Part shown: positions 2,407 to 64,000 of the stretch, piece by piece
How the letters are laid out: each line of letters begins with the position of its first letter
Position numbering within the stretch: position 1 is the stretch's first letter
Source of the DNA: Octopus sinensis
Taxonomy: Eukaryota
DNA length: 64,000 nt
Assembly: GCF_006345805.1 (NCBI RefSeq)
Contig: NC_043011.1
Span: 63,066,464 to 63,130,463, forward strand
Reading direction: 5' to 3'
Program-made: the position numbers and the translations under genes
The notes under the pieces: model-generated
Seen by the model: only the letters and a program-made list of their open reading frames with translations
The model's database searches: none
Told to the model about the DNA's origin: nothing

Positions 2407-2431
<25 letters not shown>

Positions 2432-4535: not shown

Positions 4536-4566
<31 letters not shown>

Positions 4567-4569
<3 letters not shown>

Positions 4570-23709: not shown

Positions 23710-23711
23710 AG

Positions 23712-23829
23712 ACCGTGACTTTTATCTATCAGCAGTATGTGTCTACAATACCGTGACTGTATGAAGATAAATTAAATTTAGCCTCTCTCGGGTGGCAAGA
23801 TTTAGCAATAACAATATATCGGTAATAAA
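23712..23829 (+). other. Probable non-coding last exon (3' UTR) of gene 1 with AATAAA at 23824-23829
   Basis: First AG after a ~740-nt AG-free pyrimidine tract (TTCTTCTTCAG|ACCGTG), with a polyadenylation signal ~110 nt downstream. Confidence 0.55.
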
Positions 23830-28641: not shown

Positions 28642-29676
28642 TATATGTATGTGTGTGTGTGTGTGCATATTATATATATATATATATATGTGCGTGTGTG
28701 TGTATATATATATACATATATGTGTGTGTGCATGTCTGTTTGTGTATGCATGCGTATTTGTATAAGCATACGCACACACACACACACACATATATGACCT
28801 TGTTAAAGTGCGCCTACAACACCTAGATAGTGTGCTCAAAATGAAGGATAAAAAGGAAAAAGCAATCAATAAATAAATGACAAACCCATGTAATTCTAAA
28901 TAATCCAATAAGTCAATACGCAGTCAACATCGCCATTTTGGACAACAGTAAACTGAAGGAGAATATTAGCAGCAAAGCAAATGGTCAACAGGTAAAGTAT
29001 GAGATGCAAAAGATGAAACCAACTAAGTGAGAATGGCCGATGGTGGAAGTACAGGACGAAGATGATTAAAAGTAGAACTCAGAGAAAAAGGCCCTGGAAG
29101 AAAGAATGTCGGAGCAGTCTATAGGTTTTGTGTGAACGGTCCATGCTTGCAGGGAGGCACTGGAACATTCTACCGATTTTCTCATCCCAAGTTCCGTGCG
29201 ACTTACTGTCTCATCCCAATCGCTTCCTGTTTCCAGACTGGAAATATGTGGATGCTGTACGCACTGCTGATATAACACGGTACTTCAACACAATGTGGAC
29301 AGTAGCAGACGAACTGCAGTGTTACTGGATATGGTGGGAAGGAATTAATTCCTCTCAACTGGCAACAACAACCACGGAATCAAAGGTAAACGCGTCGGCC
29401 CGTAAGACCACCATATACAGCGAATGATCTAGGGTCACCACCGAAAACACCTCAACAAATACTACACCAGTGCTATCGATAAATTCAGGAGCCTAGTAAG
29501 TGCTTAACAACAGAAACTACTCTACTTTGGAGATCTAGATACATGAAATGAAACAATGCGTATGTCACTAGGGGAAGCGTATCTGCCCATTGGCACAGTA
29601 GATGCTGAAATTCACATTCGTATGTTGTATGGGGAACTGATTGGAGTGAAAGAACGAAAGGTGTAATTGCGACGTA

Positions 29677-30417
29677 CACCCGGCATTAAGTAAGTTGGTG
29701 TGATCTAGAAATATGTGAAGTCTGTTACCTCGTTTAGATAATACCTCTTCCATAATTTTGAAACAATACGTATGTCACTAGAGGAAAAATATCTGCCCAT
29801 TGGCACAGTAGATGCTGAAATTCACATTCGTATGTTGCATATGGAACTGATAGGAGTGAAAGACCTAAAGGTGGAGTTGCGACGTACACCTGGCAAGTGG
29901 TCACACCTGTCGAATGAGTCCCCACGATTTGGGCTATCTGGTTGGCGATATGTAGAACATATTACCATTTTGACTTGCATAATATATACTATTAATGTTG
30001 CAGAGACTGCCTTTGAATGTAACAGCCAAACAACAGGTGTGGTCACTTCCCAGGTGTAATTGTGACGTACACCTGGGAAGTGGCCACACCTGTTGTTTGG
30101 CTGTTACATTCAAAGGCAAGTCAAAATGGTAATATGTTCTACATATCGCCAACCAGATACGCCCAAATCGTGGGGACTCATTCGACAGGTGTGACCACTT
30201 GCCAGGTGTGCGTCGCAACTCCACCTTTAGTTCTTTCACTCCTATCAGTTCCATATGCAACATACGAATGTGAATTTCAGCATCTACTGTGCCAATAGGC
30301 AGATACTTTTCCTCTAGTGACATACGTATTGTTTCGAAATTATGGAAGAGGTATTATCTAAACGAGGTAACAACTTCACATATTTCTAGATCACACCAAG
30401 TTACTTAATGTCGGGTG
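29677..30417. repeat. 741-bp near-perfect palindrome with 9-nt centre (30059-30067), preceded by a partial direct repeat (29550-29690)
   Basis: The arms align base by base apart from a few substitutions and a 32-nt insertion in the left arm. Confidence 0.92.
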
Positions 30418-31641: not shown

Positions 31642-32127
31642 TTTGTTTTAAAAATGACTTGTTTTGCAAGACTTTTCTACAGTTCAGGAAAAGTTGACAA
31701 TTCTCTATTTGGCAAATGTATAGCAATTTAATAGACGTACATTCGTCAGGTTGAAGCAGGTATTTTAACAATGCTTAAAAATTAACACTTTAAGAAAGAA
31801 ATCAATCAAATAAATCATTCTGCTTTCATCAATCGTTGACAAAGACGAAATAACAAAAAGAAATGGAAATCAGGATGTGGAAGATGGTGATTCATGTTTG
31901 TATTTTCGCTATCACATTTGATGCAAATAAATTCCTATTTAAATGTCCATATACGTAGCAACGAAAACGCTGAATACATTTATCACAGCAATAAAATTTA
32001 TTTTGTCAGCTCAGACAGTAATTAAAAGAAATATAATAAAATATGATTTGATATTCTTTTGATTTGTGGTTTGTTCAAAAATAAATTGCCATAAATATTC
32101 CCACGCTTTGATGTATTCTGCTAAATG
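31642..32127 (+). repeat. 486-bp direct repeat, copy 1 (copy 2 at 36238-36724), ~99% identical
   Basis: Direct sequence comparison shows only ~3 differences. Confidence 0.92.
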
Positions 32128-33617: not shown

Positions 33618-33653
<36 letters not shown>

Positions 33654-33654
33654 T

Positions 33655-33870
33655 ATACTCTTTTACTCTTTTACTTGTTTCAGTCATTTGACTGCGGCCA
33701 TGCTGGAGCACCGCCTTTAGTCGAGCAATCGACCCCGGGACTTATTATTTGTAAGCCCAGTACTTATTCTATCGGTCTCTTTTGCCGAACCGCTAAGTGA
33801 CGGGGACGTAAACACACTAGCATCGGTTGTCAAGCAATGCTAGGGGGACAAACACAGACACACAAACACA
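33655..33870 (-). mobile_element. SINE 3' half
   Basis: Reverse complement of the SINE family tail. Confidence 0.8.
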
Positions 33871-33874
33871 CACC

Positions 33875-33905
<31 letters not shown>

Positions 33906-34867: not shown

Positions 34868-35285
34868 TTTTTTTTCTTTCAATAGAGCACTTCTATAGCA
34901 GTCCTATTAATCCTTATATATCCAATATATATCACATGTAATTATTGTCTTTAAATTATTCAGAATAGTTTCTATCATAATTAAAAATTAAATCCAGAAA
35001 TTAGCCCGACAATTATGCAAGCAAGTCGTGAATTTAAATGTAGTTTTCTGATGAATCTCAGCGCAGCTTGAGATAGTTTTGAAAGAATTTCGTGAGATGT
35101 TCACATGATTTTAGGACTCGTTCCATTATATTATTCTTATGTAAACATATTTGAAATGTTTAATTGTAGATACACATTTATACAAAAGCAGCTGAAACAG
35201 TTTTCACAGCTATTAACGCATATTACTTCGTTTTCACGTGAGAAGCAAATTCTTTTGACTCCAAGAAATTTTCGGATATTCTTTT

Positions 35286-35542
35286 ATTCTTTTACTGTTT
35301 TACTTGTTTCAGTCATTGACTGTGGCTGGAGCACCGACTTTAGTTGAGCAAATCGACCCCAGGACTTATTCTTTGGAAGCCTAGTACTTATTCCATCGGT
35401 CTGTTTTGCTGAACCGCTACGTTACGGGGACGTAAACACACCAGCATCGGTAGTCAAGCGATGTCGGGGGGACAAACACAGCAAACAAACATATACACAC
35501 AAATACATATATACGTACACACACACACACACATATATATAC

Positions 35543-35612
<70 letters not shown>

Positions 35613-35772
35613 GACGGGCTTCTTTCAGTTTCCGTGTACCAAATCCACTCACAAGGCTTTGTTTGGACCGAGGCTATAGTAGAAGACGTTTGCACACGAT
35701 GCTACGCAGTAGGAATGAACCCGGAACTATGTAATTGGCAAGCAAGCTATTTACCACTCAGCCACTCCTGCT
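35286..35772 (-). mobile_element. tRNA-derived SINE, full length
   Basis: Reverse complement of the family, with internal TA expansion. Confidence 0.85.
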
Positions 35773-36237
35773 ACTTAAAAAAAAATCAAAGATCATGGAC
35801 ACTTGTAGTATATCAATACCGGAAAATATTTTTTATACAGTAAGTGTTATACGAGGGAGATCGAATGTTGCACATCTTATTACTACATTTTATTGTTAAC
35901 TCATAAATTCTGTTTTTTGTTTTGTGAATCTCTTTCACTCCTCTGCAAGCATCGTATGCACCACCACAGATCATGTTTCAGGATTCCTTAAAGATGAAGT
36001 GACCCGATACGATATTAAGTCAAAGTTCATAAAGCGGCCGAAATGCTATATCAACGAGGGTGGACGCTGCAATCCATACATGCCTGAGCCATTAAGCATC
36101 CTCATAGACTCCGCGGACCCAGTATTATTAAATTCCTGGCATGACATTTATAATCCCTGCCCCTATGTCAACGCTACCTGCTGCAAATATGCGATTACAC
36201 ATTAGAAGCAACCAAATGCGGATTTCCATGTTCGGTA

Positions 36238-36724
36238 TTTGTTTTAAAAATGACTTGTTTTGCAAGACTTTTCTACAGTTCAGGAAAAGTTGACAATTCT
36301 CTATTTGGCAAATGTATAGCAATTTAATAGACGTACATTCGTCAGGTTGAAGCAGGTATTTTAACAATGCTTAAAAATTAACACTTTAAGAAAGAAATCA
36401 ATCAAATAAATCATTCTGCTTTCATCAATCGTTGACAAAGACGAAATAACAAAAAAGAAATGGAAATCAGGATGTGGAAGATGGTGATTCATGTTTGTAT
36501 TTTCGCTATCACATTTGATGCAAATAAATTCCTATTTAAATGTCCATATACGTAGCAACGAAAACGCTGAATACATTTATCACAGCAATAAAATTTATTT
36601 TGTCAGCTCAGACAGTAATTAAAAGAAATATAATAAAATATGATTTGATATTCTTTTGATTTGTGGTTTGTTCAAAAATAAATTGCCATAAATATTCCCA
36701 CGCTTTTATGTATTCTGCTAAATG
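36238..36724 (+). repeat. 486-bp direct repeat, copy 2
   Basis: See 31642-32127. Confidence 0.92.
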
Positions 36725-38182: not shown

Positions 38183-39660
38183 GAGAGAGAGAGAGAGAGA
38201 TAGGGAGAGAGAGATATCCAGTGTAAGTTTGAATGAGCATAATATCCATTCGATATTATTTTATGTCCCGCTAGTTTTAACAATAGCCTGGCAAGAAGAC
38301 GACAACAAATATGATAAATGATGAAAGGTGATGATTATTTCTTTCCATACCGGGACATATTTGCCAATTCTCGTAATGAAATCGTGAGACAAATGTCTTA
38401 AAACATATTTGAATAAGGATGGGCAAAGGCAATATTAATTAATAGTGGTAAAGACTCAGCAGACGTCGTAGTGCTTGCTTGTTCAATTAATCAGATCATG
38501 TTAGAGTTATTACAAAAAATAGAGCGGTTTTATGTATGGTCGGAACTGAACATCAACAAAATATTGCGATAGGGTAAAACAATGAATATAAAATGTGTAC
38601 TCCAGTACTATTCTAGCATTTAACGTAGGATAGTCTATGCCTTGAAGAGTGCTTCATGTTCTGAGTCTGATATCAATAAGAGCATTGATTTCAAATTATG
38701 GTGTCAGTAATTTCGGCCCCCGAAAGTTTTAAGGACAAAATTGTCCTCGGCGGAATTAGATCTCTGAACATGAAGACGGACGAAATGTCCGGATGTAGTT
38801 CAACCGGCGTGCCAACGAATCTGTAAATATCTCCACCTTAAAAGAAATAAATTGAAATACTGCTATCAAAATTGCGTACAAAGACAGTAATATCGTGGGG
38901 GTGGTGCGTCGATATTGTCGACCCCAACTTTCAATTGGTACTTACTTTAACAACCCCAAGATGATGAACGAGTAAGACGATCTTGGTGAAATTTGAACTC
39001 AGAATGTTTAGTCGGAAGAAATAGTGCTAAGCATTTGTTTCCCGCTCGATAACGAATTTTTCAAGCTTTTAGTCCTAAAATCTTTTAAAATATAACAAAT
39101 ATTTTAATGAAACACGTTTTACAAGAAAGTCGATTATAATTATGAATTTTGTCGTAATTATTTCAATGCAAATTCTATTATAGTTACATTCTTAATTTTA
39201 GGTCAGCAGTATATTGTCATTTTAATGATAAATTACATCATAGGGATATGCTATCTTTGTCTTTTTAAACGACGTAATTTAGAATCAGGATAATCGTTTT
39301 TTATTGATTTTCTCCTCCATAGACGGGAAGGATATAAATAAAGCGATAATGACTGGAGAAGCGATAAGAAATCGCTTTATTTATACACTTATATATATAT
39401 TATTTATATAATTCCAGCCTTCTGCGAACATAACCATATCTCACTACTACTATTTGCTGCATTCTGTTTGGGAATTTACCATTCAGGGCCTTCTATTGCC
39501 AGTCATCTGTTTATTTTTTAGATTTTTAAAGTTCGTTTGTTGTTTTGGTTTCTTTATGTTGGCGAATATTATTGTGGTCGATGGTAAGAACATTTCAAGA
39601 GAATTTTCTGCTACGTTTTTCAACCCAGCGTCGATATAACATTTGTCCTGACAGTAAAAG

Positions 39661-40097
39661 CTAATTCTCCTCACATTTCAAACGAAATCTTCTCAACCAA
39701 AATGTTCCTTTGTCTCCGAGAAAGATGAAATCATTTGTCTTCAGGATCGGAATTTCCACTTTTTCAAATTTCATTAAACAGTTACACAACCAGTTCAAAG
39801 GATTATAAGAAGAGCATACATTTTCAATCACACTGAACATTTCCTTAATGTCTCCATCGAACAATATTAATTTTGAATAATAGTGTTCACTACCAACTTC
39901 CAGACACAATAACAGTAGATCGACAGATCTTGCCGAACGTTTTGCTTCAAACGACTGCAATTTTGTAAAAGACTTGAAAGTGCATATTCTCAGAAAATAT
40001 TCAGAATCTACTTCACTTTCCCTTCTCAAAATGTATGGGCAGAAATATGTCTGCGGGTTATAAATATCTGGGGGAATGAATAAAATGACAGGAGAAT
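39661..40097 (-). CDS. Orphan terminal coding exon, ~146 aa (D-SPVILFIPPDIYNPQTYFCPYILRRESE...WLRRFRLKCEEN), function unknown
   Basis: 437 nt stop-free in AT-rich DNA, preceded on the - strand by TTCTTTTGTACAAATTTGATCAG (phase-1 acceptor). The frame stays open in the duplicate at 60557. Confidence 0.6.
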
Positions 40098-40397
40098 CTG
40101 ATCAAATTTGTACAAAAGAATTTGATTAAATATTCTTCTATTTCCTTTTCCCTTTCGTCTTTTTTCTGTCTTTTTGTTTTCGTTTGTTTTTAATTTGTCA
40201 AAAGTCCCATAGTAAATTAATTATGCATGCCAACCAAATCATTATATATGTTTTCAGATTATAATTTACAACGTCACATACTACAAATGACATTCGTCCT
40301 TGTAGTTCAAGAACATCTGTTACACCAGAGTCCATCATACGATTTCAAATAATAATTTAATTGGTTACAACAGCACTAAACGTTTAGTTCAAGAAAA

Positions 40398-40443
40398 ATG
40401 GCCAGGAAAAGTTGTTCCTTATTTATATCATTTCTCGTTTTCG
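40398..40443 (+). CDS. Gene 2 coding exon 1 (signal peptide MARKSCSLFISFLVF-G), phase 1
   Basis: AAAAATG...TTC G|GTAAGT. It splices in frame to 44513, giving MARKSCSLFISFLVFGIALT. Confidence 0.75.
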
Positions 40444-41164
40444 GTAAGTTATATTATGCTTTTACGTACTTTCCTGTTCTACGATACCCGTGTTTGAAGA
40501 AGAAATATCTTATACTCTCTCTATCCATCTATCTGTTCGCTTGTCTGCATGTCTGTCTGTAGTCTGCCTGCCTGTCTAGCTACCAACCTCTGTTTCTCTT
40601 CCAAACCACCTATTATGTATGTATGTATCTAGGTATGTATTTATTTACATCACTATGTATCTGTTTACAACTATCTAGGGAATTAAACCAATTTTGTAAT
40701 ATTAGCTAATAATTCGGAGATACTTTATAAGGCAAAAACATATCGAATAGGTAGAAATTTTTGTTTATAACGTACTAACGAATTTAAGGAGATATTATTG
40801 ACTAATAACAAAAAAAAACATCATTAATTCCCTAGACGACAAAAACTTAAATGTAGACAATAATTAAATTACTTATATCATAAATTTAGCAAATTTGTGT
40901 ATATATATAAACCCGGTTATATTTTACTAATTATTGTAGTTATAATATGTAGTAGTAAAATGTGTATAAATTTGCAAGATGCTATATAGTCTATATTAAT
41001 GTAATTAGAATAAGATGAAAATTAGATGTTTACAAAATAGATAATTTCATGAATGAAAATAGATTAAATTGGATGTTTTTTTTATTAATTTATATTATTA
41101 TATTATGTATGTTACGTAGTTAGTATTTAAGTTATTTACACTTAAAATTTTTTGCAGTAAATGA

Positions 41165-41716
41165 TATATTAAAGTTGATTTTTTTTCCTTATTCTCACAG
41201 CTAAAATATATTTGTAATTTTTATAGCTGAAATACATATTTCTATCTATTTTTCTGTACATTCTATTTACTTCATATTTTCACGCGATATATTTCTTATA
41301 AACGGTAAGTTCTACGTAATTCGTTTAAATGTTTAGTTAACGAAAATCCTTCGATAGGATAAGTGATATTTTTATTTTAAGGAATATTGTTAAATGATTT
41401 CCGATCATGTAAGGTTAATATACATATTTTTGTATATTTATTTGATAATTAGTTAAGATAAGTACATTTATTCTATAATTATTTTTATAATAATTTATTA
41501 TTTTAGACATGAAGGGTGACTATATTTCTTAATAAAATTAATTTTTTGATTGATTTAATTTTAAATAGAATTGATTTTATTCTTGTTATCTATTTGAAAA
41601 TATAGCCGCGAGACGCGCGAAGTCTTTTTATTGCTATTTACTATTTATTGTACTTTATTGATTTTTAGAATAACGTTTTAATAGTATATGTTTTCTATAT
41701 GGTGTGAATAACATCA
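41165..41716 (+). repeat. ~550-bp segment in gene 2 intron 1, repeated (diverged) at 49948-50736 in intron 2
   Basis: Colinear alignment, e.g. CACGCGATATATTTCTT...AAACG(G/C)TAAGTTC and GGTGTGAATAACATC. Confidence 0.8.
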
Positions 41717-42899: not shown

Positions 42900-43790
42900 C
42901 TCATAGGTTAATTGATTTAACCTATTTAATGTAGAAGAGAAGACCTGAATGGAAAGCCCTCAACATACAAAAAGAAAACCATGCTTCAAGACAGTAGAAT
43001 TGATACGAAGTGCAGCATCACTTGGACACAGGACCACTATATTACATAACATTTTGCAGAATGTATTTCCGCAAACTACCTGATGAACAAGAGACACAGT
43101 GCCGCTCTTGGAATCCGAAGGTGCAACAGCATGTGTAGTCTATGTCATGTTTTTGTGGAAGACATTACGCATATGATTAGCAGCTGTCCTAAAATATCGT
43201 CACGGTACTACCTCCCTATGCGGCACGATGTTGTTGCTCAAACAATTCACCATGCCACCCGCAAAAAAGATTGTCCTGAAATATAGTTAGAATATCCTTC
43301 TGTTATGGAATACATTCATAAATACCAACTCAAGGAATGCTGGTGGAATATTCTCATCTAATCTTCTGTCAAATGTAAGCATAACAGGCCGGATATTGTT
43401 GGGGCAAAGTTATGCACCACCTTAGAGTTTAGCTGCCCAGCAGATATAAATATCTCTCTGAAAATCAAAGTAAAAGAGGATATCTATGGACAACTGTTTT
43501 GAAACTTCCAGCATATATATCCAGACTATGAATTAATATTCATATCAATAATAAATGGAACTCTAGCTTTTGTTATTAAATGCTTAAATGAGAATCTGGA
43601 TAAACTGGGTATCTCAGAAAGAGAAAATTCACCGTAGCTCGTTACAAGTCCAATCTACGAGTAGAACAGAAAGAATAGGCAAGGCATTTGTCAAGTTCCA
43701 AATGTGAGTTTGTCTATATTAACTGCATCCCAAAGAGGGAGCCTTGTGTCTTCGCTGGAAACCGACTCCCTCCTCAGTGGAAAATTTATA
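42900..43790 (+). pseudogene. 3' fragment of a restriction-like-endonuclease (R4/R2/NeSL-type) non-LTR retrotransposon
   Basis: CSLCHVFVEDITHMISSC (CCHC), RHDVV, HNRPDIV and LEFSCP motifs, with stops. Confidence 0.85.
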
Positions 43791-45436: not shown

Positions 45437-45477
<41 letters not shown>

Positions 45478-45687
45478 AAATAAGAAAAGGGAGAAATACA
45501 TCTAAATCAATTATCAACTACCAGATAATACCCAATCACATAATTTATTAAACCACTACATATGAACATTAAGGTCAAACATAATAATATAGAACAAAAC
45601 GGTGTACATGAAGGAGTAATATGATATAATAAGTACAGTGTGTATAAGTGAATATAAATAAATATAAATATAAATTACATCTTACAG

Positions 45688-46058
45688 CTGAATGCCTGAG
45701 GAAAGAGGTGGTTTATCAATGCACTGTAAATACACAATATGATTGTAGGATGTACATTGGTGCGACTAAAAATAGTATGAAACAACGGCTAAACTATCAT
45801 AGATATATTTTTAAAAACAAAAATAGGATGAATTCTACGGTGTTAAGTACGTATATTTGGGAACTCAAGAGTAAGAACATAGATTTTAACTTAAATTGGG
45901 AAATACTAACTTCTGCACCTGTATACAATAATAGAAATAAAACATGCTCTTTATGTATAAATGAAATGTTCTTCATCATCAAAGCTGGCCTACCTATTAT
46001 TAATAATATGAACGAGCGGAATAGTTTGCCTTCACAAATTAGCGTATATTTTCTCTAG
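45688..46058 (+). pseudogene. Penelope GIY-YIG endonuclease fragment
   Basis: ECLRKEVVYQCTV...MYIGATKNSMKQRLNYH...TVLSTYIWELK...WEIL...CSLCINE. Confidence 0.9.
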
Positions 46059-48018: not shown

Positions 48019-48145
48019 ATCTCCGAAGAGGCCTTGGGATATCTTTGTAAGTGTCTCATTTATAACTACATATTGACCTATCCCACGTGGCTAATATGAG
48101 CGAAATGAGACACCCATATCTGCATGGCCGAAACAGCTGTAAGAT
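48019..48145 (+). ncRNA. Variant type I hammerhead (U4C core, long branched stem II)
   Basis: ATCT/AGAT stem I, CCGAAGA, GGCC/GGCC stem II, GAAA, palindromic ACAGCTGT, GUA. Confidence 0.55.
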
Positions 48146-48528
48146 GTAGTTTACATTTATATTTATATTTATTTATATTCACTTATACATACTGTACTTA
48201 TTGTATCATATTACTCCTTCATGTACACAGTTTTGTTCTATATTATTATGTTTGACCTTAATGTTCATATGTAGTGGTTTAATAAATTATATGATTGGGT
48301 ATTATCTGGTAGTTGATAATTGATTTAGATGTATTTATCCATTTTCTTATTTTGTATTATTAATTTGTGGTAAAACATTTTACCTTTGCCCATATAATAC
48401 AGTAAATGAATTAATTGCATCGCAATTCTTAACATTTTTGTATTAAATGTGTTGGGTACTTCACTAGCAGTATATTGGGTATATGTTATCCCATGGTGGG
48501 TTGCATTTACAACCCCTATCTCAATTTG

Positions 48529-49357: not shown

Positions 49358-49589
49358 GGAATATAATTCCAAACTTACAGGGAAAATTTCAATCTAGCAA
49401 TTCTAAATCAAATTTCACAGTGCATATAATTTAGAGAAAAACCTATATTAAGTAATTCAAAAGTGAAACACGTTATTCACATCATATACAAAAAAACAAA
49501 TATAGTATAAAAACCTTGTTCTAAAAGTCAATGAAGTACATAAACACTAATAATAAACTGACTACGCGCGTTTCGTGTCTATATTTTCA

Positions 49590-49910
49590 AATAGATAATA
49601 ATAAAATAATCCTTAGCCTATCGCGGACGGACAGAAGGAGGAACAACTGGGTACTAGAAAAGCTCGGTTGCGTGATGACGCTTCGGCGAAAGATCATGAA
49701 GCGGAAACTGCAGTTGCTTGGCCACGTCATGCGTCGGGATGGACATGAGCGAACGATCATAACTGGCAAGATGAACTGCAGATATAAAAGACCACTCACA
49801 TAATGGTCTTTGTTCTCAGCTGTCCATGGGGTGGAGGACAGGAGAAGGTGGCATGACATCCTCATGACCAAAGCATCGTACAGTGTAACACCTGACTAGG
49901 ATGATGATGA
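49590..49910 (+). pseudogene. RTE-type LINE 3' fragment
   Basis: LSRTDRRRNNWVLEKLG...RKIMKRKLQLLGHVMRRDG; GATGATGAT tail. Confidence 0.8.
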
Positions 49911-50475
49911 ATAAAGTCAATTCCATTTAAAATTTAAATTAACTGTAATATATTATAGTTAATATTTTCTTATTTTCGCTGCTAAAGTACATTTTGTCAT
50001 TTTAACAGCTTAAATACATATTTCTTTCAATTTATTCTATAACTTTATTTACGCCATATTTCCACGCGATATATTTCTTCTAAACGCTAAGTTCGACGTA
50101 TTACGTTTAAAATTTTAGCTAATAGAAATTCTTCGATAAGTTATGGTTTTATTTTAAGTAATATTGTTAAATGTTTTTCCATTATTTATTGTTAAATCAC
50201 GTATTTTTTAATATTTATTTGATAATTATCATAAGTTAAGATACGTACATTTATTTTATAATTTTATTATTATCACTTTTATAATAATAATAACAATTAT
50301 CATCATCATCATCATCATCATCATCATTATTATTATTATTATTATTATAATTATTATTGTTATTATTATTATAATTATTATTATTATCATCATCATTATA
50401 ATTATAAATATTACTATTATTATTGTTATTATTATCATTATGATGCTTCTTCTTCTTCTTCTTCTTCTTCTTCTT

Positions 50476-50514
<39 letters not shown>

Positions 50515-50743
50515 GGTGTTGTTGTTATTATTTTAGACGTGATGAGTGACTATATTTTTAAACTGAATTAATTTTAGAACGATTGGATTTTAAATCGAAT
50601 TGATTTTCTTTTTATCTATTTGAAAATATAGCCACGAAACGCACGTAGTTAATTTAATATGATTGTTTATGTATTTTAGTGATTTTTAGAATCAGGTCTT
50701 TATTGTATTTTTTTTCTATATAGTGTGAATAACATCTTGCGGA

Positions 50744-51028: not shown

Positions 51029-53095
51029 GTAAGTTTAATGCTATTTTGTATTCCACATATATACCAAAAGTGAATATCAAGTAAGTAAATCAAATTTTAT
51101 AAGATTATAAATATTTCCAGGTTAGGTGAAGATCTAATCCTGGTTATAACACTTACAGGGATTTGAAGCGATTATTATGGTGAATATAGCCGATATTGTC
51201 TCTACTTTCTCGCTCGCTGAGACTACCATTTCAAATAATACCAAAAATTTAGTTACAGTAATTAATTATGATTATTTCTACATGATGGAATAATAACAGC
51301 TTGGTGCGTATAGAAGAATATCTTCCTTGCAGTATATATTTATGGACATCTTTGTAGTTCTTAAATTCCTGCCAATATTTTCTTAATGTTAGATACGTAA
51401 CACATTATTGGATAAATCAAAGCGATGATATTACTCTCAATCGTAGTTATCTAATGGATGAGAAATGTCCTTGTACAAGAGGTAACCTTCATTCTTTGGC
51501 ATGATACTGAATACCTAATATGCATAAGAGAAATTGTAAACTAGTAGTCGGCAGTAATTACGATAGCCGTTTAGTGTATGCCTGCAAAACAAGCGGGTTA
51601 AGTGTATTGATCTGAAACAAGTTTAACAGCACTCAAAGAAAAAGTTTGAAATTGATGTGAGGATCTAATAGATCATGACAACACACGCTGACACATGCAT
51701 AGATGCTTACCAGTAGCGACCAGTTTTTCACTGGTTTAAACAATGCAGTACACATAATTTATATTACGGAAATCCTTGTGTTTGAAGATATAACATTTTT
51801 GCCCAACCTCAGAATTCTAAATTAAAAGCTAGTAACCTAGAGCTAGGGTAAAAGTCTCCTGTATTGGTACACTTATATAAACATAACTGACTAACGGCTT
51901 AACTATATATTGTGCTATTGTGAGGTTATTGTGATACATAATTTGTATGTTTCTGATGACAACATCAGTTTCGTTATTTCCTTCAAACATGAAATGTTTC
52001 TTTGTCTATTAGCTTTGTAACATTCAGGAAGGTTGGAGCATCCACATTGGAGCAAAGCAAAGTGCTTTCGACTGATTAGAAGATCGAACTGGTGATAAAC
52101 TTTATTGTTTTAGACGGAAGAATGTCTACAAGATTACAAATATATTCATTTCTGATTCAAATTTTAAGTAATATTTTTCCAGTGGTTTTATTCAAAGCGT
52201 AATTTCAGCGGAGTATAAGTGTTTGCCATCCAGATGTTTTTCATTGCTGCAGTTGTGATTAATGCTTTTAAGTTATGGTTTTGTTAGTCAACGAATGCCC
52301 TCAAAAAGATAAGCACAGCCATAGATATGTAACTATTTGACCTGGTCTAACAACAAATTCTCCAATTTCCAAAGTTCTTGTAACCTATTTCAGCTTTACA
52401 CTATTAAGTGCATGCCTCATGGTCACTAATTTCTAAAATATTTTAATGTTTTTCGACAGATGGGATGATTTCAAACAGTTTCAAATTTAGTCAGCCACTG
52501 TGCACATTTGTCAATTACACGAAGTATTTAAGGAAATCATTTGACAGCACTTGTATTGATTAGAAAGGAGAATATTTCCCGCGATTTATCGTTCTCCCAA
52601 ATCCACAAAACTATATTAAGAGACATAATACCTTCATCTGAAACAACCAACCAATCTCATTTTAGCATTTACAGTATAAACCGTTTGTGTCTCTTTGCTA
52701 ATTGTGCATTTGATTGAATCGTCAGCGTGATAGTGTGTATGAATTGCATGCAATTATAACTGTCAATAGCAGAGGAGCATGCATACCACAGATATATCAC
52801 TAAAATTTCCTTTCTTTGGCACTTAGCTTTTAAACAATATATTCTTGAGTCGATTCCCTCGACTAAAGCCTGTCAAGTTTTTGCCTCAGCATGGCCACAA
52901 CTCAGCAACTGAAACAAATAAACGTTATAATGTAAACGTTTAAAAAAATATCAGTGTTGACACGATTGTCATTTCCTAAAGAGTGGTCAATACTTCAATA
53001 CTATTATTTCTGTATATTTATCAGTTATTGTTGTAACGAAGTTCTCAACTTACTAATAATACACTGCTGTGCATTCTACGCTTCTTTTGTGATAG

Positions 53096-55550
53096 TCTTT
53101 TACTTTTTTACTTGTTTCAGTCATTTGACTGCGGCCATGCTGGAGCACCGCCTTTAGTCGAGCAAATCGACCCCAGGACTTATTCTTTGTAAGCCCAGTA
53201 CTTATTCTATCGGTCTCTTTTGCCGGACCGCTAAGTGACGGGGACGTAAGCACACCAGCATCGGTTGTCAAGCAATGCTAGGGGGACACACACAGACACA
53301 CAAACACACACACACTTACACACACATATATATATATACATATATACGACGGGCTTCTTTCAGTTTCCGTCTACCAAATCCACTCACAAGGCATTGGTCG
53401 GCCCGGGGCTATAGCAGAAGACAGTTGCCCAAGATGCCACACAGTGGGACTGAACCCGGGACGATGTGGTTAGTTAGCAAGCTACTTTATTTCATAAATT
53501 TGTCATATAGACAGTACAAAGAGCTTTGCGGGCTGGACAAACACATTAATGAATGAAAATGAAATATAATGAATAGATGAGAGACGAAACCCAACACCCG
53601 CCGATTGGATTTTTCTCAAAAACATATTTTCTTTTTTTTATTTTAAATCAATATGAGGTTTCAAACCTCTTACAAGGTGAAGGCACTAAAACCTCTTACT
53701 TAACATGTTTTTTTCTTTCTTTCTTAAAGCACAAATTGAGGTTATAAACCACTACAAAATAATCCAATAAGATGTGGTTTCAAACCCTGTAACGAGGGTC
53801 TTTCACCTCCTACTCTTCGATATATCCATCGATATATTCATCATTATATTCAATGCCGCTTGAGTTCCTGTATCCCGCCATTTCCCATGTGTCACTCATG
53901 TAGGAAATGTAAGTCTTGTAAGGGCCACCCGGCCATATGCGACACTCCTCCCCAAATCCTTTAAGCCTTTCCCGCAAGTGAAACCTTATGACCTCCACAG
54001 CTATCTGCAGAGGCAATCTAGGATCCCGTGTGAAGGGCATATCTACTGTTTCTTTATGTTCTACTATTTTTTCCAACTCACCGCCCTTGTAGAAAAAGAT
54101 AATTAATTGATCATCTTTGAGGGTGGGGGTGGTTTATTCAACCGTGGGTGGCACAACTTCGGGACATGCAGTCGGCACATCATCTCCCCGCTGAGATGAC
54201 CCGTTCTTCTTCCTTCTTTTTTGTTTTCTTCCTGGCTTCGGGAGAGTGGAGCTCTTCCGCTTTGTCCGGAGAGTCTCCCCCGCCTTCCGAAGCCTTAGGT
54301 TCCTTCGGCGGGCAACTATTGTTGCCCGCCTTCTTCCTTTTTAATCCTTTTTGAGTTGAGGAGGCTGAAGCCTCCTCGACCAAATCCACCTCTCCCTTTG
54401 ACTGGGTAGGGGAGGTGGTATCTAGTGACTGTTCCAGGACCTTACCATGGTCCTGGTGGCAGTTCCTTTTAATGTGGCCTGGCTGCAGGCACGAGTGACA
54501 CTTTGGGGGACGTCTCTCAAGTATCACCGGATACCTGCAGCCAGCCATTTTCAACAAGTCTGGAAAAACCAGTTCTGTTGCGGCCGATGGGGTCCACAGG
54601 GTCAAATCGCTATTGGCCCCTCCCAATCGACTGCCGGCAATACTCTTACATTTAAGAGCCTGGGCCCGCCATCCCCCAGTCCCAGTCGAATGGTATATTC
54701 AATCCAATCCGCTTCGGTGCCCGAGGGGAGCCCATATACCTAGGTTCGTATTAATTTTCTTCCACAATATGACGGGAGAAACAGAATTTCCTTGCCTTCT
54801 AAAGGCTGACTCGCAAACTGGCGAGCCTTTTCCCCGTTGTCAAAAAGCAACCATACGGTTGCATATTTGACACCACGGGATATACATTTTACAGAGGACA
54901 AATGTTCTTTAAGTTCATTTTTTATGACTTGTTTTGGGAAGATGGTGATGGAATTAACAACTTTAGAATACGTCTTCTCCTCCATATCTTTTAACCATTG
55001 CTTAGGCGGGTTAATTTCCCACTCTAAGACACAGTTTTTCTTTTTAAGTTCCTTCTCTGCTATGTCAAAAATAGTTCAAAAGTAGTTCAAAAGGCAGTCT
55101 GCCAAAAAATTAAACCGAATAAAAATAAAACAAAATAAAAGAGGAGGAAACTGAAATTAAAATAATGAAAAGAATGAACCAAAATTTAGAAAGAAAGAAA
55201 AAATAGAAGGGAAGAGTAAAAGAAAAATCTCACAAATAGCACAGACAGGGAATCCTTTGTATAATACTCCAAAAAGTTAATCCAAATGGCTAATTCTTAT
55301 TTTTCTGGCGAGATACGCTCACTAGAATTCACAAGAAGAATTCTCAAAAAAATTCTCAATGCACCGCTACGGTGATGAGAACCAAGTATTTTGCTCGCTA
55401 TAGCGAGCCATAATTGACAAGTTTTCTTTTTGTTCTTTTTTTTTCTATTCGCGGAGCCGAAACTCACATCTGCTCACTGTAACAGTCCAGACCAACTAGT
55501 GTTGCATTAAGGGTAAGAAAGCTACTTACCACAAAGCCACTCCTGCGCCA
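53096..55550 (-). mobile_element. SINE split into 53096-53487 and 55519-55550 by a 2-kb insertion
   Basis: The two parts rejoin into the SINE head; AAGCTACTT is duplicated at 53479-53487 and 55519-55527. Confidence 0.85.
53488..55518 (-). mobile_element. ORF1-only (half-LINE-like) retroelement encoding a disrupted gag-like ORF1 with a CCHC zinc knuckle; no RT
   Basis: 9-bp TSD. ORF pieces 54740-54985, 54180-54626 (KCHSCLQPGHIKRNC) and 53810-54076, broken by a stop at 54740 and a frameshift near 54620. Confidence 0.75.
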
Positions 55551-59830: not shown

Positions 59831-60556
59831 ATTCTTCCATAGGTCCAAATGCCAGCAAAATCGACAGACATAGCACTTATCTATATGCGTCTACGAGCGT
59901 TACAATATATTTACGATTCGTTTTCCTTCTGTATCAATATAAGTATCTTAGAAGCTTGCTGGCTATAATAAAACATTTAGTTTTTCAATGTTTTAATTTT
60001 TAAAAAATTCATTTAATTTAAACGAATTGTTCAAATCATCAGGAATGCAACTATCCCTGCTGAGATAGATTTGATCCACACGTTCCACAGTCCCTGTAAT
60101 CCATTGGCTACGTCTCCATACTTTTCCTTGAATTCTATAACTCTCATTTAGATATTTTGGTTCCTAATTTCTGAATGTAAAGTCAATTGTCTGGCACTTT
60201 CTATTCTCTTTTTCTACTTCTACGAAATCAGGAGTTCTAGCTTCTATTAATGTGTCTGAATGTTAAAGTCGCAAACCATCTTATATTTCTAATTTTCTAG
60301 TACTTACTATGTTCATTCTCAAACCTCTTATGTATATGTCCAAATCCTAGCTTTCTACATAAACCCCAGTGGATAACACTCCATAGATTGTCATTTCCTT
60401 TCTTGTATTCTATTTGTGCCAGTATACTACAATCACTGAATATTTGAGTAACGCTTTTTTGGTCGATGCTAGGAAATTTTCAAGATAATTTTCTGCTACG
60501 ATTTTCAACCCAGTCTCAATATATTTATCAAATATCATTTGTTCTGACAGTAAAAG

Positions 60557-61054
60557 CTAATTCCCCTCACATTTCAAACGAAATCTTCTCAACCAAAATG
60601 TTCCTTTGTCTCCGAGAAAGATGAAATCATTTGTCTTCAGGATCGGAATTTCCACTTTTTCAAATTTCATTAAACAGTTACACAACCAGTTCAAAGGATT
60701 ATAAGAAGAGCATACATTTTCAATCACACTGAAAATGTCCTTAATATCTCCAATGAACAATATTAATTTTGAATAATTGTGTTCACTACCAGCTTCCAGA
60801 CACAATAACAGTAGATCGACAGAACTTGCCGAACGTTTTGCTTCAAACGACTGCAATTTTGTAAAAGACTTGAAAGTGCATATTCTCAGAAAATATTCAG
60901 AATCTACTTCACTTTCTCTTCTCAAAATGTATGGGCAGAAATATGTCTGCGGGTTATTAATAACTGGGGGAATGAATAAAATGACAGGATAAATTGTACA
61001 AAACAGTTTGATTAAATATTCATCTTTTTTCCCCTCTTTTCTTTCGGCTTTCAT
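60557..61054 (-). CDS. Second copy of the orphan ORF (~97% identical over ~430 nt); the acceptor AG is lost through a ~10-nt deletion
   Basis: Direct alignment to 39661-40090 shows 12 substitutions, no indels, and the same stop position. Confidence 0.5.
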   Translation of the reverse strand: MKAERKEGKKDEYLIKLFCTIYPVILFIPPVINNPQTYFCPYILRRESEVDSEYFLRICTFKSFTKLQSFEAKRSASSVDLLLLCLEAGSEHNYSKLILFIGDIKDIFSVIENVCSSYNPLNWLCNCLMKFEKVEIPILKTNDFIFLGDKGTFWLRRFRLKCEGN

Positions 61055-61483
61055 TCATTCACTTTTTCTGTCTTCCTGTTTTGGTTTGTTATAAAATTGA
61101 AATTTAAAGGCTGATGATGTCATTCCATCAGCGTGTGTACGCTGGTTGCCCTCGTTCAAACATCAAATTTAAATTGTTATATTTTTGAATTTTTATCGCT
61201 TCTTATTTTCAACTCGACAAAGACAGACTTACTGTTAAAATATATTTTAACCAATAAAATATCTATTACCATCGCGCTCTTCGTATCGGGTGTTTAACTT
61301 TGTGAAGAGTAAGTAACGTCAATTGTGCCTTTTTCGTTTGTCCATTCACTGGTATATTTAACTCTATGTAAAACAGAAAATACATCAATAATAGATTATC
61401 CCATAGTTGAGTGCCTGTCTAACAACGTACAATTTCATTCAATGGTGCCCCAACCATGAATTGCCAATACAAACATATACATA

Positions 61484-61660
61484 CAGGCGCAGGTGTGTCT
61501 GTGAAGAGCAGGCGTTGCTGTAAGGCGTCGGCGTGGCTGCATGGTAGGAAACATTAGTCTAAAATTCCGGGTTCCGTCCCACTGAAATATCCATTACTAT
61601 GGCCTCGGGCCGACCAAATCCTGGTAAATGGTTATGGTAGGCTGAAACTTAAACACGCTC
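61484..61660 (+). mobile_element. Degraded SINE head
   Basis: AGGCGCAGG...GGGTTCCGTCCCACTG...GGCCTCGGGCCGACCAAA similarity. Confidence 0.6.
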
Positions 61661-61661
61661 G

Positions 61662-61700
<39 letters not shown>

Positions 61701-61829
61701 GAAATAAGGTACTCAGAAGATCGGATGGTATATATTTACAGATATTTATTTGTATATTATATTCTTTATATATACATATATATCATATCACTTAGATCAT
61801 TAGCGCTTTCTCCCATATATACCCATGTG

Positions 61830-61871
<42 letters not shown>

Positions 61872-64000
61872 CACACACACATTCCTGGGTCTGTATTTGT
61901 CCCCCCATCATTGCTTTACAACCAATGTTGTTGTGTTTACATCGTATGATAGTGGTGCGGTAAATGAATTGGCACATTTCCTCTCACGAGGCTTAAGCAC
62001 ACAGCTTGTAGTCACAAGATAACTATTTTATGTTTTATTATATTTTGTTTTTTCTCACCCACAATCCTTACTATGTCGCGTAGGTATCTATTCAGATAAC
62101 GTTATATGAGGACGATTTCATGTTTTTACTGACTTTATTGAACATTGTTTCTAAATTATGGTAATAGATTATGGTTTCATTATTATGTAGAACATTTCAA
62201 TCATAATAACATAAAGAAGAAAAACATGATAACAAAATATAAATGGAAAAATAAAACAAATTAACCTGACATATAATGTAAATAGAACTGAATATATTGA
62301 CACTTAATGATGCTTATTTAAGGCCAGGTAGTACACAAAAACACACACATACACACACGCACACACAAACACACACACACACACACGCACACACACACAT
62401 TCACACATAAGTATAAATTGAGAAAAAGAAAATGCTTTCATAAGTTTCTATTGGATAAAAGTGAAAAAGCATTTACATATCAAAATGTGCTTTCAGCTGC
62501 AATAATTTGAAAATGCTATTTAATCTTGCTTGAAGTAAACCAAAACAATTAAGGCATCTGACAGAACACTAATCATTCGTGTGAGCCCTAAATATTCTCG
62601 TTCTGTTTTTTTCATCCCTACACATGTCATGCTATTTGTGTTGAACGAACTGAAGAAGAAAAGGAACACAGAGAACAAATATCAATTCATTGCAACAAAT
62701 TGCACATTAATAAAAGTAACAAAAAAGGTAATATAGGTCCGATGTAAAACAAGACTTTTGTGAAGGAACTTAAAGACGGCCTGTCGTGTGAATTTGTAGA
62801 TAATTTGGAATACAATACCAACGCACACAGATACGCACGCACACACACACACACACATATATATATGTGTATATATATATGTGTGTGTATATATATATGT
62901 ATATATATATATATCTATATATATATATATATGTATGTATAAATGTATGTGTGTGTGCCTACGTGTGTCTGTGCGTGTTTATGTAAATAAGTATGTATTA
63001 ATATTTATATGGCTGTGTATATCATGCAAGTTTAAATACATTTTGATGTTAAATATGTCAAAGGTGGTACTCTGGCGGCGTTGAACATTCCTCATGATCA
63101 ATATTCATATAAATCACACACACGCACACACACACACACAGAGCAGTAAAGCGCTCTATTATAATACAATTGTACAGAAATTGAGTGGGAAGAAGTAGTT
63201 GACCACGTCAATCTCGTGGTTCAAGTGTGCTGAGTTATGCCCTGTAAAAAACGATGAAGGGCAATATCAACTCGGTGGCATTTACCTCACAACATAAAGA
63301 GCCGGATGATATACAGCTAAGCATTTTCTCCGGCGTGGTAACGGCTGTGCCATGTCTCCGCCTTTATACATACATATTTCTAAGTCATTCTAGTTTTGGC
63401 ACAAGGTTTGAAATTTTGAATGGGGGGAAGTATCAATGGCATTCAATTCCACTACTTGATTGAGATAATATTGTATTGATTTCGGAATCATGAAAGTTCA
63501 ACTCGGTGTAATTTGACCTCATAACGTATAGATCTGGAGGAAATGCTGACAATTGTATAATTCTACGCGCTAACGTTTCTGCCATCCTGCAACATCTACA
63601 CATATATTAATTACGGTTTCCTTTTTTTTGGAAACTGGGTTAAGAACATATTGAGGGGAAAGTGGAGTAGTTGACCCCGGTCCAAGGAGAAAAAATGCTA
63701 TTTTATTGACCCCCAAAAGGATGAAAGGGTAAGTCAAGTAGCCTGAATTTGAAATCAGATCGATAAGACGGACGAAATGTCGCTAAGTAAGTTGTCCGGT
63801 GTGCTAACTATTCCACCAGCTCGCCGCATACACCGGTTTAGAATAAGTGACAGCAATTTACTTAACTATGCGTTCTGAATTTGAATTAGTTTCCGTACAA
63901 ACATACTTTAGACCTTCTAAAACGAATCAATTGGTTAAATGGCCCATAGCAATTTAATTATGCATGCCATCCAAATCATTATATATGTCTTCAGATTATA

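What the first reader, a model, noticed from the sequence alone, without database searches (positions are those of the whole stretch)
39570..40443. Duplicated head-to-head module: orphan minus-strand coding exon 300 bp upstream of the peptide gene
Seen: a 437-nt stop-free exon-like ORF (~146 aa, 7 Cys, phase-1 acceptor) points away from gene 2's signal exon. The same block recurs at 60457-61092, where the ORF differs by only 12 substitutions (several synonymous or conservative: E/D, M/I, V/A) with no indels, while the flanks are visibly more diverged and gapped. Any upstream exon of this gene must lie on the - strand overlapping or inside gene 2. Inference: a co-duplicated peptide plus partner pair (binding protein, chaperone or antisense-coupled gene), or recent gene conversion. 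The protein is unrecognised.
Basis: partly seen in the sequence, partly recalled or inferred. Interest (0 to 1): 0.7.

Follow-up and report, generated by a model that had tools for sequence, protein, structure and literature searches.

The report
Duplicated orphan ORF, probably not a gene
A 146-codon reading frame next to a putative peptide gene really is present twice in the window. Its two copies look homogenised by DNA copying between them rather than preserved as a protein, so it is most likely an ordinary low-copy repeat and not a partner gene.

Summary
A stop-free 146-codon minus-strand frame (40098-39661, 7 Cys, conserved pyrimidine tract plus AG) recurs at 60457-61095. The core has 12 substitutions and no indels (2.8%), while the flanks are 11-17% diverged and gapped.

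The functional reading is not supported:
- Ten of the 12 changes are non-synonymous (dN/dS 1.2).
- Synonymous sites are as conserved as the rest (dS 0.026 against about 0.13 in the flanks).
- The core is a mosaic of near-identical tracts around one diverged patch.

Pfam, PDB and searches of billions of proteins give no relative. The only exceptions are two short ORF calls on Logan contigs of another organism whose SINE tail matches SINEs in this window. Those contigs match only the first ~45-70 codons plus upstream non-ORF DNA. They are two paralogous loci, and one is bracketed by ~150-nt inverted repeats, which is transposon-like. Copy B keeps that arm. It abuts a truncated LINE and sits 2.8 kb from the only promoter-like match, at the window edge. 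Coding constraint on the shared 45 codons is marginal (P about 0.08).

Best reading: a duplicated, TE-like low-copy repeat with gene conversion and an unselected ORF. An orphan exon is not excluded. Ordinary interest.

The parts
39661..40098 (-). ORF copy A: 146-codon stop-free frame including the TAG stop at 39663-39661, with 7 Cys. It has no in-frame ATG near its 5' end; the upstream in-frame stop is TGA at 40101-40099.
40068..40091 (-). Pyrimidine tract plus AG (ctgtcattttattcattcccccag), a candidate 3' splice site. It is identical in A and B and is the best-conserved stretch against L001 and L002, which also keep YAG.
39933..40067 (-). The 135-nt (45-codon) exon-like segment. This is the only part of the ORF shared with the Logan loci L001 and L002 (67-70% nt identity). 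Constraint in the ORF frame is marginal.
39927..39932 (-). Donor-like hexamer where homology to L001 ends: GCAAGA in copy A, GCAAGT in copy B, GTAAGT in L001, ACAAGT in L002. It is not conserved as a GT donor.
39661..39893 (-). The 3' two-thirds of the ORF (about 77 codons). It is found only in the two window copies and has no DNA or protein relative in L001, L002 or any database searched.
39838..39928 (.). Diverged patch inside the core: 8/91 differences (8.8%), 7 of them non-synonymous. It lies between two near-identical tracts, 39661-39837 (1/177) and 39929-40091 (3/163).
39572..39660 (.). 3' flank of the duplicated block: 13.5% substitutions plus an 11-nt indel against copy B. A/B homology ends at 39572.
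40092..40190 (.). 5' flank, A/G-rich on the minus strand and of low complexity: 17% substitutions and 4 indels against copy B. Copy A leaves the family alignment at about 40190.
40192..40263 (.). 72 nt upstream of the putative signal exon that reappear at 63929-64000 (89%). This is the only evidence that the duplication extends towards the peptide-gene promoter.
40398..40444 (+). Putative signal-peptide exon of 'gene 2' (MARKSCSLFISFLVFG followed by GTAAGT). It is unverified: the window holds no second copy and I found no downstream peptide exon.
60457..61095 (.). Copy B of the block.
60557..61054 (-). ORF copy B: 165 codons from an ATG that copy A lacks, with the same stop position as copy A.
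61100..61290 (-). Arm 'X', present in copy B only. It is homologous to the inverted-repeat arms of L002 (left 509-661, right 2210-2339) and to L001 at about 150-330. It has no inverted partner in the window.
59990..60458 (-). Decayed, 5'-truncated retroelement (LINE-type) tail in the same orientation as the ORF. It starts exactly where A/B homology ends. The family assignment is by eye and from memory.
61291..63928 (.). A 2.6-kb stretch between arm X and the 72-nt promoter-like match in copy B. It holds SINE copies and (TA)n runs. Copy A has no equivalent.
63929..64000 (.). The match to 40192-40263, cut off by the end of the window.

Best explanation
The block is a low-copy repeated DNA segment, not a demonstrated gene. 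It belongs to a small sequence family that is also present as at least two paralogous loci in another organism, whose SINE tail matches SINEs in this window. In one of those loci the segment sits just inside one of two ~150-nt inverted-repeat arms, so the unit looks like a non-autonomous TIR-type mobile element or a relic of one.

In this window the unit was duplicated locally, 20.9 kb apart in direct orientation, about 11-17% of neutral divergence ago. Later, interlocus gene conversion re-homogenised about 444 bp of it (39648-40091) in two tracts and left an unconverted 91-nt patch between them. The 146-codon frame lies within that tract but shows no protein-level selection. It is most likely an unselected ORF. 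Its first 45 codons may descend from an old exon or a mobile-element ORF.

What is shown: the duplication, the divergence contrast, the neutral substitution pattern, the relatives and their inverted repeats. What is inferred: gene conversion as the cause, the mobile-element nature, and the non-functionality.
For: 1. Divergence contrast: core 2.8% without indels against flanks of 11-17% with indels. Finding 12 of 24 substitutions in the 89-nt 3' flank has a binomial P of about 2e-4 (my arithmetic).
2. Substitutions are neutral in pattern: 2 synonymous and 10 non-synonymous, dN/dS 1.23, similar to the two wrong frames at 0.80 and 0.74. If only the protein were conserved since a duplication this old, about 11 synonymous differences would be expected on 80 synonymous sites; 2 are seen (Poisson P about 1e-3, my arithmetic).
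3. The core is a mosaic of 1/177, 8/91 and 3/163 differences.
4. Base composition is flat across codon positions, with T at position 1 at 0.35. The real peptide exon nearby has C3 at 0.36 against C1 at 0.18.
5. There is no Pfam, PDB or protein relative for the 3' two-thirds of the ORF. The single-sequence AlphaFold2 model has mean pLDDT 39.
6. The relatives are L001 and L002 (L002, L003 and L004 are one locus). They are two paralogous loci, about 75% identical to each other, and match only 40165-39894 plus copy B's upstream arm 61286-61100. L002 has inverted arms at 509-661 and 2210-2339. Arm X aligns across L002 left, L002 right, copy B and L001.
7. L002 carries +1 and -7 indels inside the shared region, so the frame is not conserved across the family.
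8. There is no conserved start codon. The ATG of copy B is absent from copy A, where stops intervene.
Against: - The low-divergence tract coincides closely with 'pyrimidine tract + AG ... stop codon + 15 nt', an exon-like footprint that conversion alone does not predict.
- An open frame of 135-146 codons in this composition is improbable by chance, about 1e-5 per start. The frame stays open for 90 codons past the point where family homology ends (P about 2e-4 to 8e-4).
- The shared 45 codons show a third-position excess (19 of 40 differences, P = 0.02 uncorrected) and omega of about 0.32 in the ORF frame only.
- Mobile-element hallmarks (both arms, target-site duplication) are not present in the window, and a family profile finds only copies A and B there.
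- Only two loci were found in the other organism, which is not the high copy number expected of an active element.
- Gene conversion is not proven without orthologous outgroup loci.
Confidence: 0.55

Rival explanations
1. The frame is the terminal coding exon of a real, lineage-restricted (orphan) gene on the minus strand. It would be spliced at 40068 from an exon lying in or beyond 'gene 2', and possibly driven by a promoter region shared with the peptide gene. Conversion, or very recent homogenisation, keeps the two paralogues alike, and the variable patch may be under relaxed or diversifying selection.
For: - The exon-shaped conservation footprint runs from the pyrimidine tract to 15 nt past the stop.
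- The pyrimidine tract and AG are conserved in all four family members.
- Only this frame is open in A, B, L001 and L002.
- The open frame is improbable by chance.
- Omega is about 0.32-0.37 in this frame across three pairwise comparisons.
- The window's own genome is absent from the protein collection, so the negative searches are weak evidence.
Against: - dN/dS between the copies is 1.23. Two or fewer synonymous changes out of 12 has P of about 0.008 if omega = 0.2, against about 0.57 if neutral (my arithmetic).
- There is no codon-position periodicity in base composition.
- The omega signal falls to P = 0.08 once the observed transition bias and the open-frame ascertainment are modelled.
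- The 3' 77-90 codons have no relative anywhere.
- L002 has frame-shifting indels.
- There is no confident fold.
- The relatives were found through an ORF database, so their being open is an ascertainment effect.
Confidence: 0.2
2. Only the first 135 nt (40067-39933) is, or once was, an internal phase 1-1 exon of a minus-strand gene or lncRNA. It would be bounded by the conserved acceptor and a donor: GTAAGT in L001, GCAAGT or GCAAGA here. The remaining 90 codons would be intronic read-through.
For: - Homology to L001 stops exactly at its TTG|GTAAGT, and L001's ORF ends 4 codons later.
- The segment is 135 nt long here and 141 nt in L001, both multiples of 3, and the 6-nt indel between them is in frame.
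- There is a third-position excess of differences.
- Copy B reads GCAAGT, the usual GC-donor consensus (from established knowledge).
Against: - The donor is not conserved; L002 has ACAAGT.
- L002's homology with the window runs 35 nt past that point.
- L001 and L002 are as similar downstream of the 'donor' (74%) as inside the 'exon' (76%), so the exon is not preferentially conserved.
- A 90-codon open read-through would itself need an explanation.
Confidence: 0.1
3. The conserved core is a cis-regulatory module (an upstream enhancer or promoter-distal element) of the adjacent peptide gene. It would be kept similar in both copies by selection on the DNA sequence, and the ORF would be incidental.
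For: - It lies 300-750 bp upstream of the putative signal exon.
- All codon positions are equally conserved.
- The promoter-proximal 72 nt is also duplicated.
Against: - Unbroken near-identity over 170 nt is longer than typical binding-site clusters.
- In copy B the core is separated from the promoter-like match by 2.8 kb of SINE-rich insertions.
- The relatives L001 and L002 carry the segment without any adjacent signal exon.
- 'Gene 2' itself is unverified.
Confidence: 0.07
4. On the origin of copy B only: it is a chimeric retrocopy. A reverse transcriptase copying a LINE RNA would have switched template onto a minus-sense transcript of a family member, giving X-block-LINE tail in one orientation. 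This would imply that the block is transcribed in the ORF sense.
For: - The 5'-truncated LINE tail starts at about 60458, exactly where A/B homology ends, and has the same orientation as the ORF.
- The sequence that continues copy A below 39572 is not found beyond the LINE in copy B.
Against: - I could not identify a poly(A) or repeat tail, or a target-site duplication.
- Same orientation has a 50% prior.
- A LINE insertion accompanied by a target deletion explains the boundary equally well.
- The 72-nt match at 63929-64000 favours an ordinary segmental duplication.
Confidence: 0.08

Closest known systems
Interlocus (ectopic) gene conversion between young segmental or tandem duplicates
   Same: A tract of a few hundred bp is far less diverged than both flanks. 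Synonymous and non-synonymous sites are equally homogenised. Identical tracts alternate with an unconverted patch, and the tract ends where indels begin.
   Different: No orthologous outgroup loci are available to show a conflict between core and flank phylogenies. The tract boundaries coincide unusually well with an ORF.
Non-autonomous TIR DNA transposons and MITE-like elements (octopus genomes are repeat-rich; about 66% is reported for O. vulgaris, PMC13282606 abstract)
   Same: A relative (L002) carries the segment just inside one of two ~150-nt inverted arms spaced 1.55 kb apart. The arm recurs in L001 and in copy B. No transposase is present. Independent paralogues exist in two genomes.
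   Different: The window holds no second arm. No target-site duplication is defined, because the L002 contig ends inside or at its arm. Only four copies are known. Copies A and B share a truncation point, so they arose by duplication rather than by separate insertions.
Orphan or de novo ORFs, and divergent (head-to-head) gene pairs sharing a promoter
   Same: The open frame has no relatives. It is divergently oriented 300 bp from a putative signal-peptide exon.
   Different: Neither partner is shown to be expressed. The arrangement is not seen in copy B within the window or in L001 and L002. There is no selection signature.
LINE-mediated chimeric retrocopies, or LINE insertions with target deletion
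   Same: A 5'-truncated LINE tail abuts the block at the exact end of homology, in the same orientation.
   Different: No tail or target-site duplication was identified. The LINE assignment is by eye only.

Membership tests
Functional protein-coding exon | Open frame with plausible splice or start signals | tested here: met
   146 codons are open, preceded by a pyrimidine tract plus AG at 40091-40068. There is no conserved ATG.
Functional protein-coding exon | Purifying selection between paralogues (dN/dS well below 1, with synonymous sites diverging like neutral DNA) | tested here: not met
   dN/dS is 1.23, with 2 synonymous and 10 non-synonymous changes. dS is 0.026 against flank divergence of 0.11-0.17.
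Functional protein-coding exon | Frame and sequence conserved in relatives | tested here: inconclusive
   Only the first 45-70 codons are shared with L001 and L002. Omega is about 0.32, but P = 0.08 under a neutral model with the observed ts/tv and open-frame ascertainment. L002 has +1 and -7 indels.
Functional protein-coding exon | Codon-position compositional periodicity | tested here: not met
   Base composition is flat across codon positions 1, 2 and 3.
Functional protein-coding exon | Transcription and translation | not testable with these tools
   No expression data are available. The window's ORFs are absent from the protein and contig collection.
Interlocus gene conversion | Tract significantly less diverged than both flanks of the same duplication | tested here: met
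   2.8% against 13.5%, 17% and 11%.
Interlocus gene conversion | Mosaic of identical and diverged segments, independent of codon position | tested here: met
   1/177, 8/91 and 3/163 differences. Omega is about 1 in all three frames. The patch was chosen post hoc.
Interlocus gene conversion | Core and flanks give conflicting trees when orthologous outgroup loci are added | not testable with these tools
   No orthologous loci from sister species are available.
TIR-type non-autonomous transposon | Terminal inverted repeats | tested here: inconclusive
   Present in the relative L002: 509-661 against 2210-2339, 76-85% complementary. In the window there is only one arm, in copy B, with no partner.
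TIR-type non-autonomous transposon | Target-site duplication at both ends | not testable with these tools
   The L002 contig ends at its right arm, and the window copies are truncated.
TIR-type non-autonomous transposon | Many dispersed copies in the genome | tested here: inconclusive
   There are two copies in the 64-kb window and no others by nhmmer profile. There are two loci in the other organism.
Divergent head-to-head gene pair duplicated as a unit | The same pairing at the second copy and in relatives | tested here: not met
   In copy B the ORF is 2.8 kb from the only promoter-like match, and any signal exon is off the window. L001 and L002 have no signal exon upstream of the block.
Structured non-coding RNA | Thermodynamic stability above shuffles, or an Rfam match | tested here: not met
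   z-scores are -0.12 (minus strand) and +0.08 (plus strand). Rfam gives no match anywhere in the window.

The most novel reading that the evidence does not exclude
The frame is the terminal exon of a cephalopod-restricted orphan gene family with no detectable relatives. It would be transcribed divergently from a secreted-peptide gene through a shared promoter and co-duplicated with it. Gene conversion would keep the copies alike while a 30-codon patch diversifies, as in a peptide-plus-partner cassette such as a chaperone or binding protein.
Probability: 0.1. Interest if true: 0.55.

Novelty: new member of a known kind. Interest (0 to 1): 0.22.

Why it matters
If the best reading is right, it matters little. 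This would be one more example of a duplicated, mobile-element-like segment in a repeat-rich genome with a locally converted tract. Its main use is as a warning that 'ORF more conserved than flanks' is not evidence for a gene when synonymous sites are equally conserved.

If the orphan-gene reading were right, it would add a lineage-specific gene physically coupled to a secreted-peptide gene. That would be of moderate interest for the evolution of cephalopod peptide and venom-like families.

Tried and rejected
1. Similarity between the ORF's N-terminus and the nearby real peptide exon ('DIYNP..CPY', 35949-36205). tblastn gives E = 0.3 and blastp 0.7. The motif is absent from L001 and L002. Rejected as chance.
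2. Internal repeat in the ORF (YNPxxxxCxxx[LM]xxE occurs twice). blastp gives E = 0.007 over 16 residues, but there is no DNA-level repeat; 91% of shuffles score as well. Rejected.
3. P0002, a 516-aa repetitive ENA protein (E = 3e-4 over 4 repeat stretches). This is a low-complexity repeat match. Rejected.
4. Pfam on both ORFs, on P0001 and P0003, on L002's neighbouring exon and on ten other long window ORFs gave nothing meaningful. The PDB sequence search gave nothing.
5. The AlphaFold2 single-sequence model had pLDDT 39. I did not run a fold search because a model this poor gives meaningless matches.
6. Structured RNA is rejected: z is about 0 on both strands, and Rfam finds nothing.
7. Exact look-ups of the window's ORFs in the contig and protein collection found none. 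The window's genome is not represented there, so no transcripts could be recovered.
8. A metagenome scan with a 33-base family-specific pattern gave 0 hits.
9. A search for the SRA run in the literature gave 0 papers, so the organism of L001 and L002 is unidentified.
10. I looked for a second exon of 'gene 2' and for other signal exons. None was convincing.
11. I looked for continuation of A/B homology beyond the LINE in copy B. Only a 69% SINE-like match turned up, and it is not colinear sequence.
12. A third-order Markov null for ORF length is inflated by the window's microsatellites (1.5 ORFs of at least 146 codons per simulation) and was not used.
Full report
**Setting**

The window is AT-rich eukaryotic DNA, with 21-42% GC per 2 kb. 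It is full of (TA)n runs and a multi-copy SINE. From memory the SINE looks cephalopod or octopus-like, but I did not test this. None of ten ORFs from the window is present in the 15-billion-protein collection, so the source genome is not represented there. Negative protein searches therefore weigh less than usual.

**Observation**

- On the minus strand, 40098..39661 is a 146-codon stop-free frame ending in TAG, with 7 Cys.
- It is preceded by ctgtcattttattcattcccccAG (40091-40068). An exon starting at 40067 would be in phase 1.
- Its 5' end is 300 bp from the ATG of a 16-codon signal-like mini-exon followed by GTAAGT (40398-40444).
- The block recurs at 60457-61095 in direct orientation. In copy B the frame starts at an ATG and is 165 codons long.
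- Between 40067 and the stop the copies differ at exactly 12 positions and have no indels.

| Region | Differences | Indels |
|---|---|---|
| Core 39661-40091 | 12/431 (2.8%) | none |
| 3' flank 39572-39660 | 13.5% | one 11-nt indel |
| 5' flank 40092-40200 | 17% | four |
| 40192-40263 against 63929-64000 | 11% | none |

With local composition an open frame of this length has probability about 1e-5 per start, which gives roughly 0.1 expected per 64 kb (the 0.1 is my arithmetic). That is unusual, but the feature was selected because it is open.

**What the substitutions say**

- Of the 12 changes, 2 are synonymous and 10 are non-synonymous. Nei-Gojobori dN/dS is 1.23, against 0.80 and 0.74 in the two wrong frames.
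- dS in the core is 0.026, although neighbouring non-coding DNA of the same duplication is 11-17% diverged. Protein-level selection would leave about 11 synonymous differences; 2 are seen (Poisson P about 1e-3, my arithmetic).
- With omega = 0.2, two or fewer synonymous changes out of 12 has P of about 0.008. Under neutrality the figure is about 0.57 (my arithmetic).
- The core is also a mosaic: 39661-39837 has 1/177 differences, 39838-39928 has 8/91 (flank-like), and 39929-40091 has 3/163.

Equal conservation at all codon positions, patchiness, and ends that fall where indels begin are what interlocus gene conversion produces. Base composition is flat across codon positions (T1 0.35, G1 0.23). 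The real Cys-rich peptide exon at 35949-36205 shows C3 at 0.36 against C1 at 0.18.

**Relatives**

- Pfam gave nothing, the word-indexed protein search gave nothing, and the PDB gave nothing.
- A full HMMER pass over 1.84 billion representatives found only P0001 (E = 1e-6) and a spurious repeat protein.
- A profile of A, B and P0001 added P0003.
- Both hits are ORF calls on short Logan contigs from runs SRR11869390, SRR11869391 and SRR11869394. P0001 even contains an in-frame TGA read as Trp.

At the DNA level:

- L001 matches 40155-39929.
- L002 matches 40165-39894. It also matches copy B alone over 61286-61100.
- L001 and L002 are different loci, about 75% identical to each other. They remain colinear with each other past the point where the window stops matching.
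- The last 77-90 codons of the window ORF have no counterpart in either locus or anywhere else.
- L002 carries ~150-nt inverted arms (509-661 against 2210-2339) around 1.55 kb, with the ORF-like piece just inside the left arm.
- The same arm 'X' is present in L001 and in copy B (61100-61290), but not in copy A. It has no inverted partner in the window.
- A family nhmmer profile finds only A and B in the window.

So the segment belongs to a small, TE-like repeat family that has multiplied independently in two genomes.

**Is any part coding?**

- The pyrimidine tract plus AG is the best-conserved stretch in all four sequences.
- The 135-nt piece after it is open only in the ORF frame.
- Against L001 it differs at 8, 13 and 19 sites at codon positions 1, 2 and 3, with omega 0.32. 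Omega is 0.35-0.37 in the other two pairs, and 0.5-1.6 in the wrong frames.
- Transitions make up 26 of the 40 differences, and the relatives were found through an ORF database. Neutral simulations with that bias, conditioned on staying open, give a median omega of 0.59 and P(omega <= 0.32) = 0.08. The third-position excess has P = 0.02 before correcting for three frames.
- L001 has a consensus donor (TTG|GTAAGT) exactly where its homology ends. L002 has ACAAGT there, and the window has GCAAGA or GCAAGT.
- L001 and L002 are as similar after that point as before it.
- L002 has +1 and -7 indels inside the shared piece.

The evidence for an ancestral exon is therefore suggestive at best.

**The 'head-to-head module'**

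- Copy A leaves the family alignment at about 40190. It then runs into 72 nt (40192-40263) that reappear at 63929-64000 (89%), cut by the window end.
- In copy B, arm X and about 2.6 kb of SINE-rich DNA lie between the block and that match.
- This is compatible with a segmental duplication of block plus promoter region, followed by deletion of X in copy A and insertions in copy B. A second signal exon would lie outside the window.
- L001 and L002 have no signal exon upstream of the block. L002 instead has a Cys-containing exon-like ORF on the opposite strand that starts with an acceptor, with no counterpart in the window.
- I could not find a downstream peptide exon for 'gene 2'.

**Boundary on the other side**

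A/B homology ends at 39572/60457. In copy B this is exactly where a decayed, 5'-truncated LINE-type tail begins, in the same orientation as the ORF (the family was recognised by eye). The sequence that follows copy A is not found beyond the LINE. Either the LINE inserted with a target deletion, or copy B is a chimeric retrocopy. No tail or target-site duplication could be identified.

**Other readings tested**

- There is no RNA structure signal (z = -0.12 and +0.08) and no Rfam match.
- The AlphaFold2 single-sequence model has pLDDT 39.
- Resemblances to the neighbouring peptide exon, and between the two halves of the ORF, are chance-level.

**Verdict**

The sequence facts are confirmed. The favoured cause is duplication of a low-copy, TE-like unit with later gene conversion over about 444 bp. 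The ORF shows no sign of being maintained as a protein (confidence 0.55).

Three things keep a real orphan exon alive as a minority reading (about 0.2 for the full ORF, about 0.1 for the 135-nt exon only): the exon-shaped footprint, the improbable length of the open frame, and the marginal codon-position signal. Expression data, a genome-wide copy count and orthologous loci would settle it.

Noticed in passing
window 35949-36205 (+): A likely real terminal peptide exon: about 85 codons, 6 Cys, ending ...CPYVNATCCKYAITH*, with marked codon-position bias (C3 0.36). The word-indexed protein search found no relative.
   Followed up: partly
window 31642-32127 and 36238-36724: A 487-bp direct repeat at 99.6% identity. 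The second copy starts about 30 bp after the stop of the peptide exon (3'-UTR-like). The coding exon itself is not duplicated.
   Followed up: no
window 45469-45690 and 48134-48360: A 94-97% inverted repeat bracketing about 2.4 kb. The interval contains a 136-codon ORF (45648-46058) with no Pfam match. This is possibly a TIR element.
   Followed up: no
window 29549-30417: A near-perfect (97-98%) inverted repeat, 29677-29978 against 30116-30417, with further internal repeats. The structure is foldback-like.
   Followed up: no
window 1432-2421: A tandem duplication of about 476-bp period at 99% identity.
   Followed up: no
window 4551-4968, 9607-10033, 11354-11720, 13226-13637, 33649-33900, 35285-35771, 53092-53487, 61595-61687: At least eight copies of one ~420-nt SINE-like element, 80-95% identical, in both orientations. 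One lies in the intron-like region just upstream of the peptide exon.
   Followed up: no
window 41164-41715 and 49948-50736; also 49472-49610 against 50599-50733 (inverted): An AT-rich repeat at 79% identity downstream of the putative signal exon. One copy is interrupted by an (ATT/ATC)n expansion, and an inverted partner lies nearby. It looks like a repeat, not a peptide exon.
   Followed up: partly
window 22814-23761: About 950 bp of imperfect (CTT/CCT)n. It is open in several frames on both strands, up to 316 codons, and has strong GC and AT skew.
   Followed up: no
window 43050-43283 (+) and 59990-60458 (-): Two decayed tails of LINE-type retroelements, carrying a Cys/His motif and 'HW.LC'-like motifs. 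They were recognised by eye and are not similar enough to each other to hit by tblastn.
   Followed up: partly
L002 1-300 (-): A 100-codon open stretch with 7 Cys in its first 45 residues, preceded by a pyrimidine tract plus AG and running off the contig. It is oriented away from the repeat unit, so the unit probably sits in an intron of, or upstream of, that gene. It has no Pfam match and no counterpart in the window.
   Followed up: partly
window 39330-39385: A short palindrome (ataaataaagcgat ... atcgctttatttat) about 200 bp beyond the end of the duplicated block, present in copy A only.
   Followed up: no
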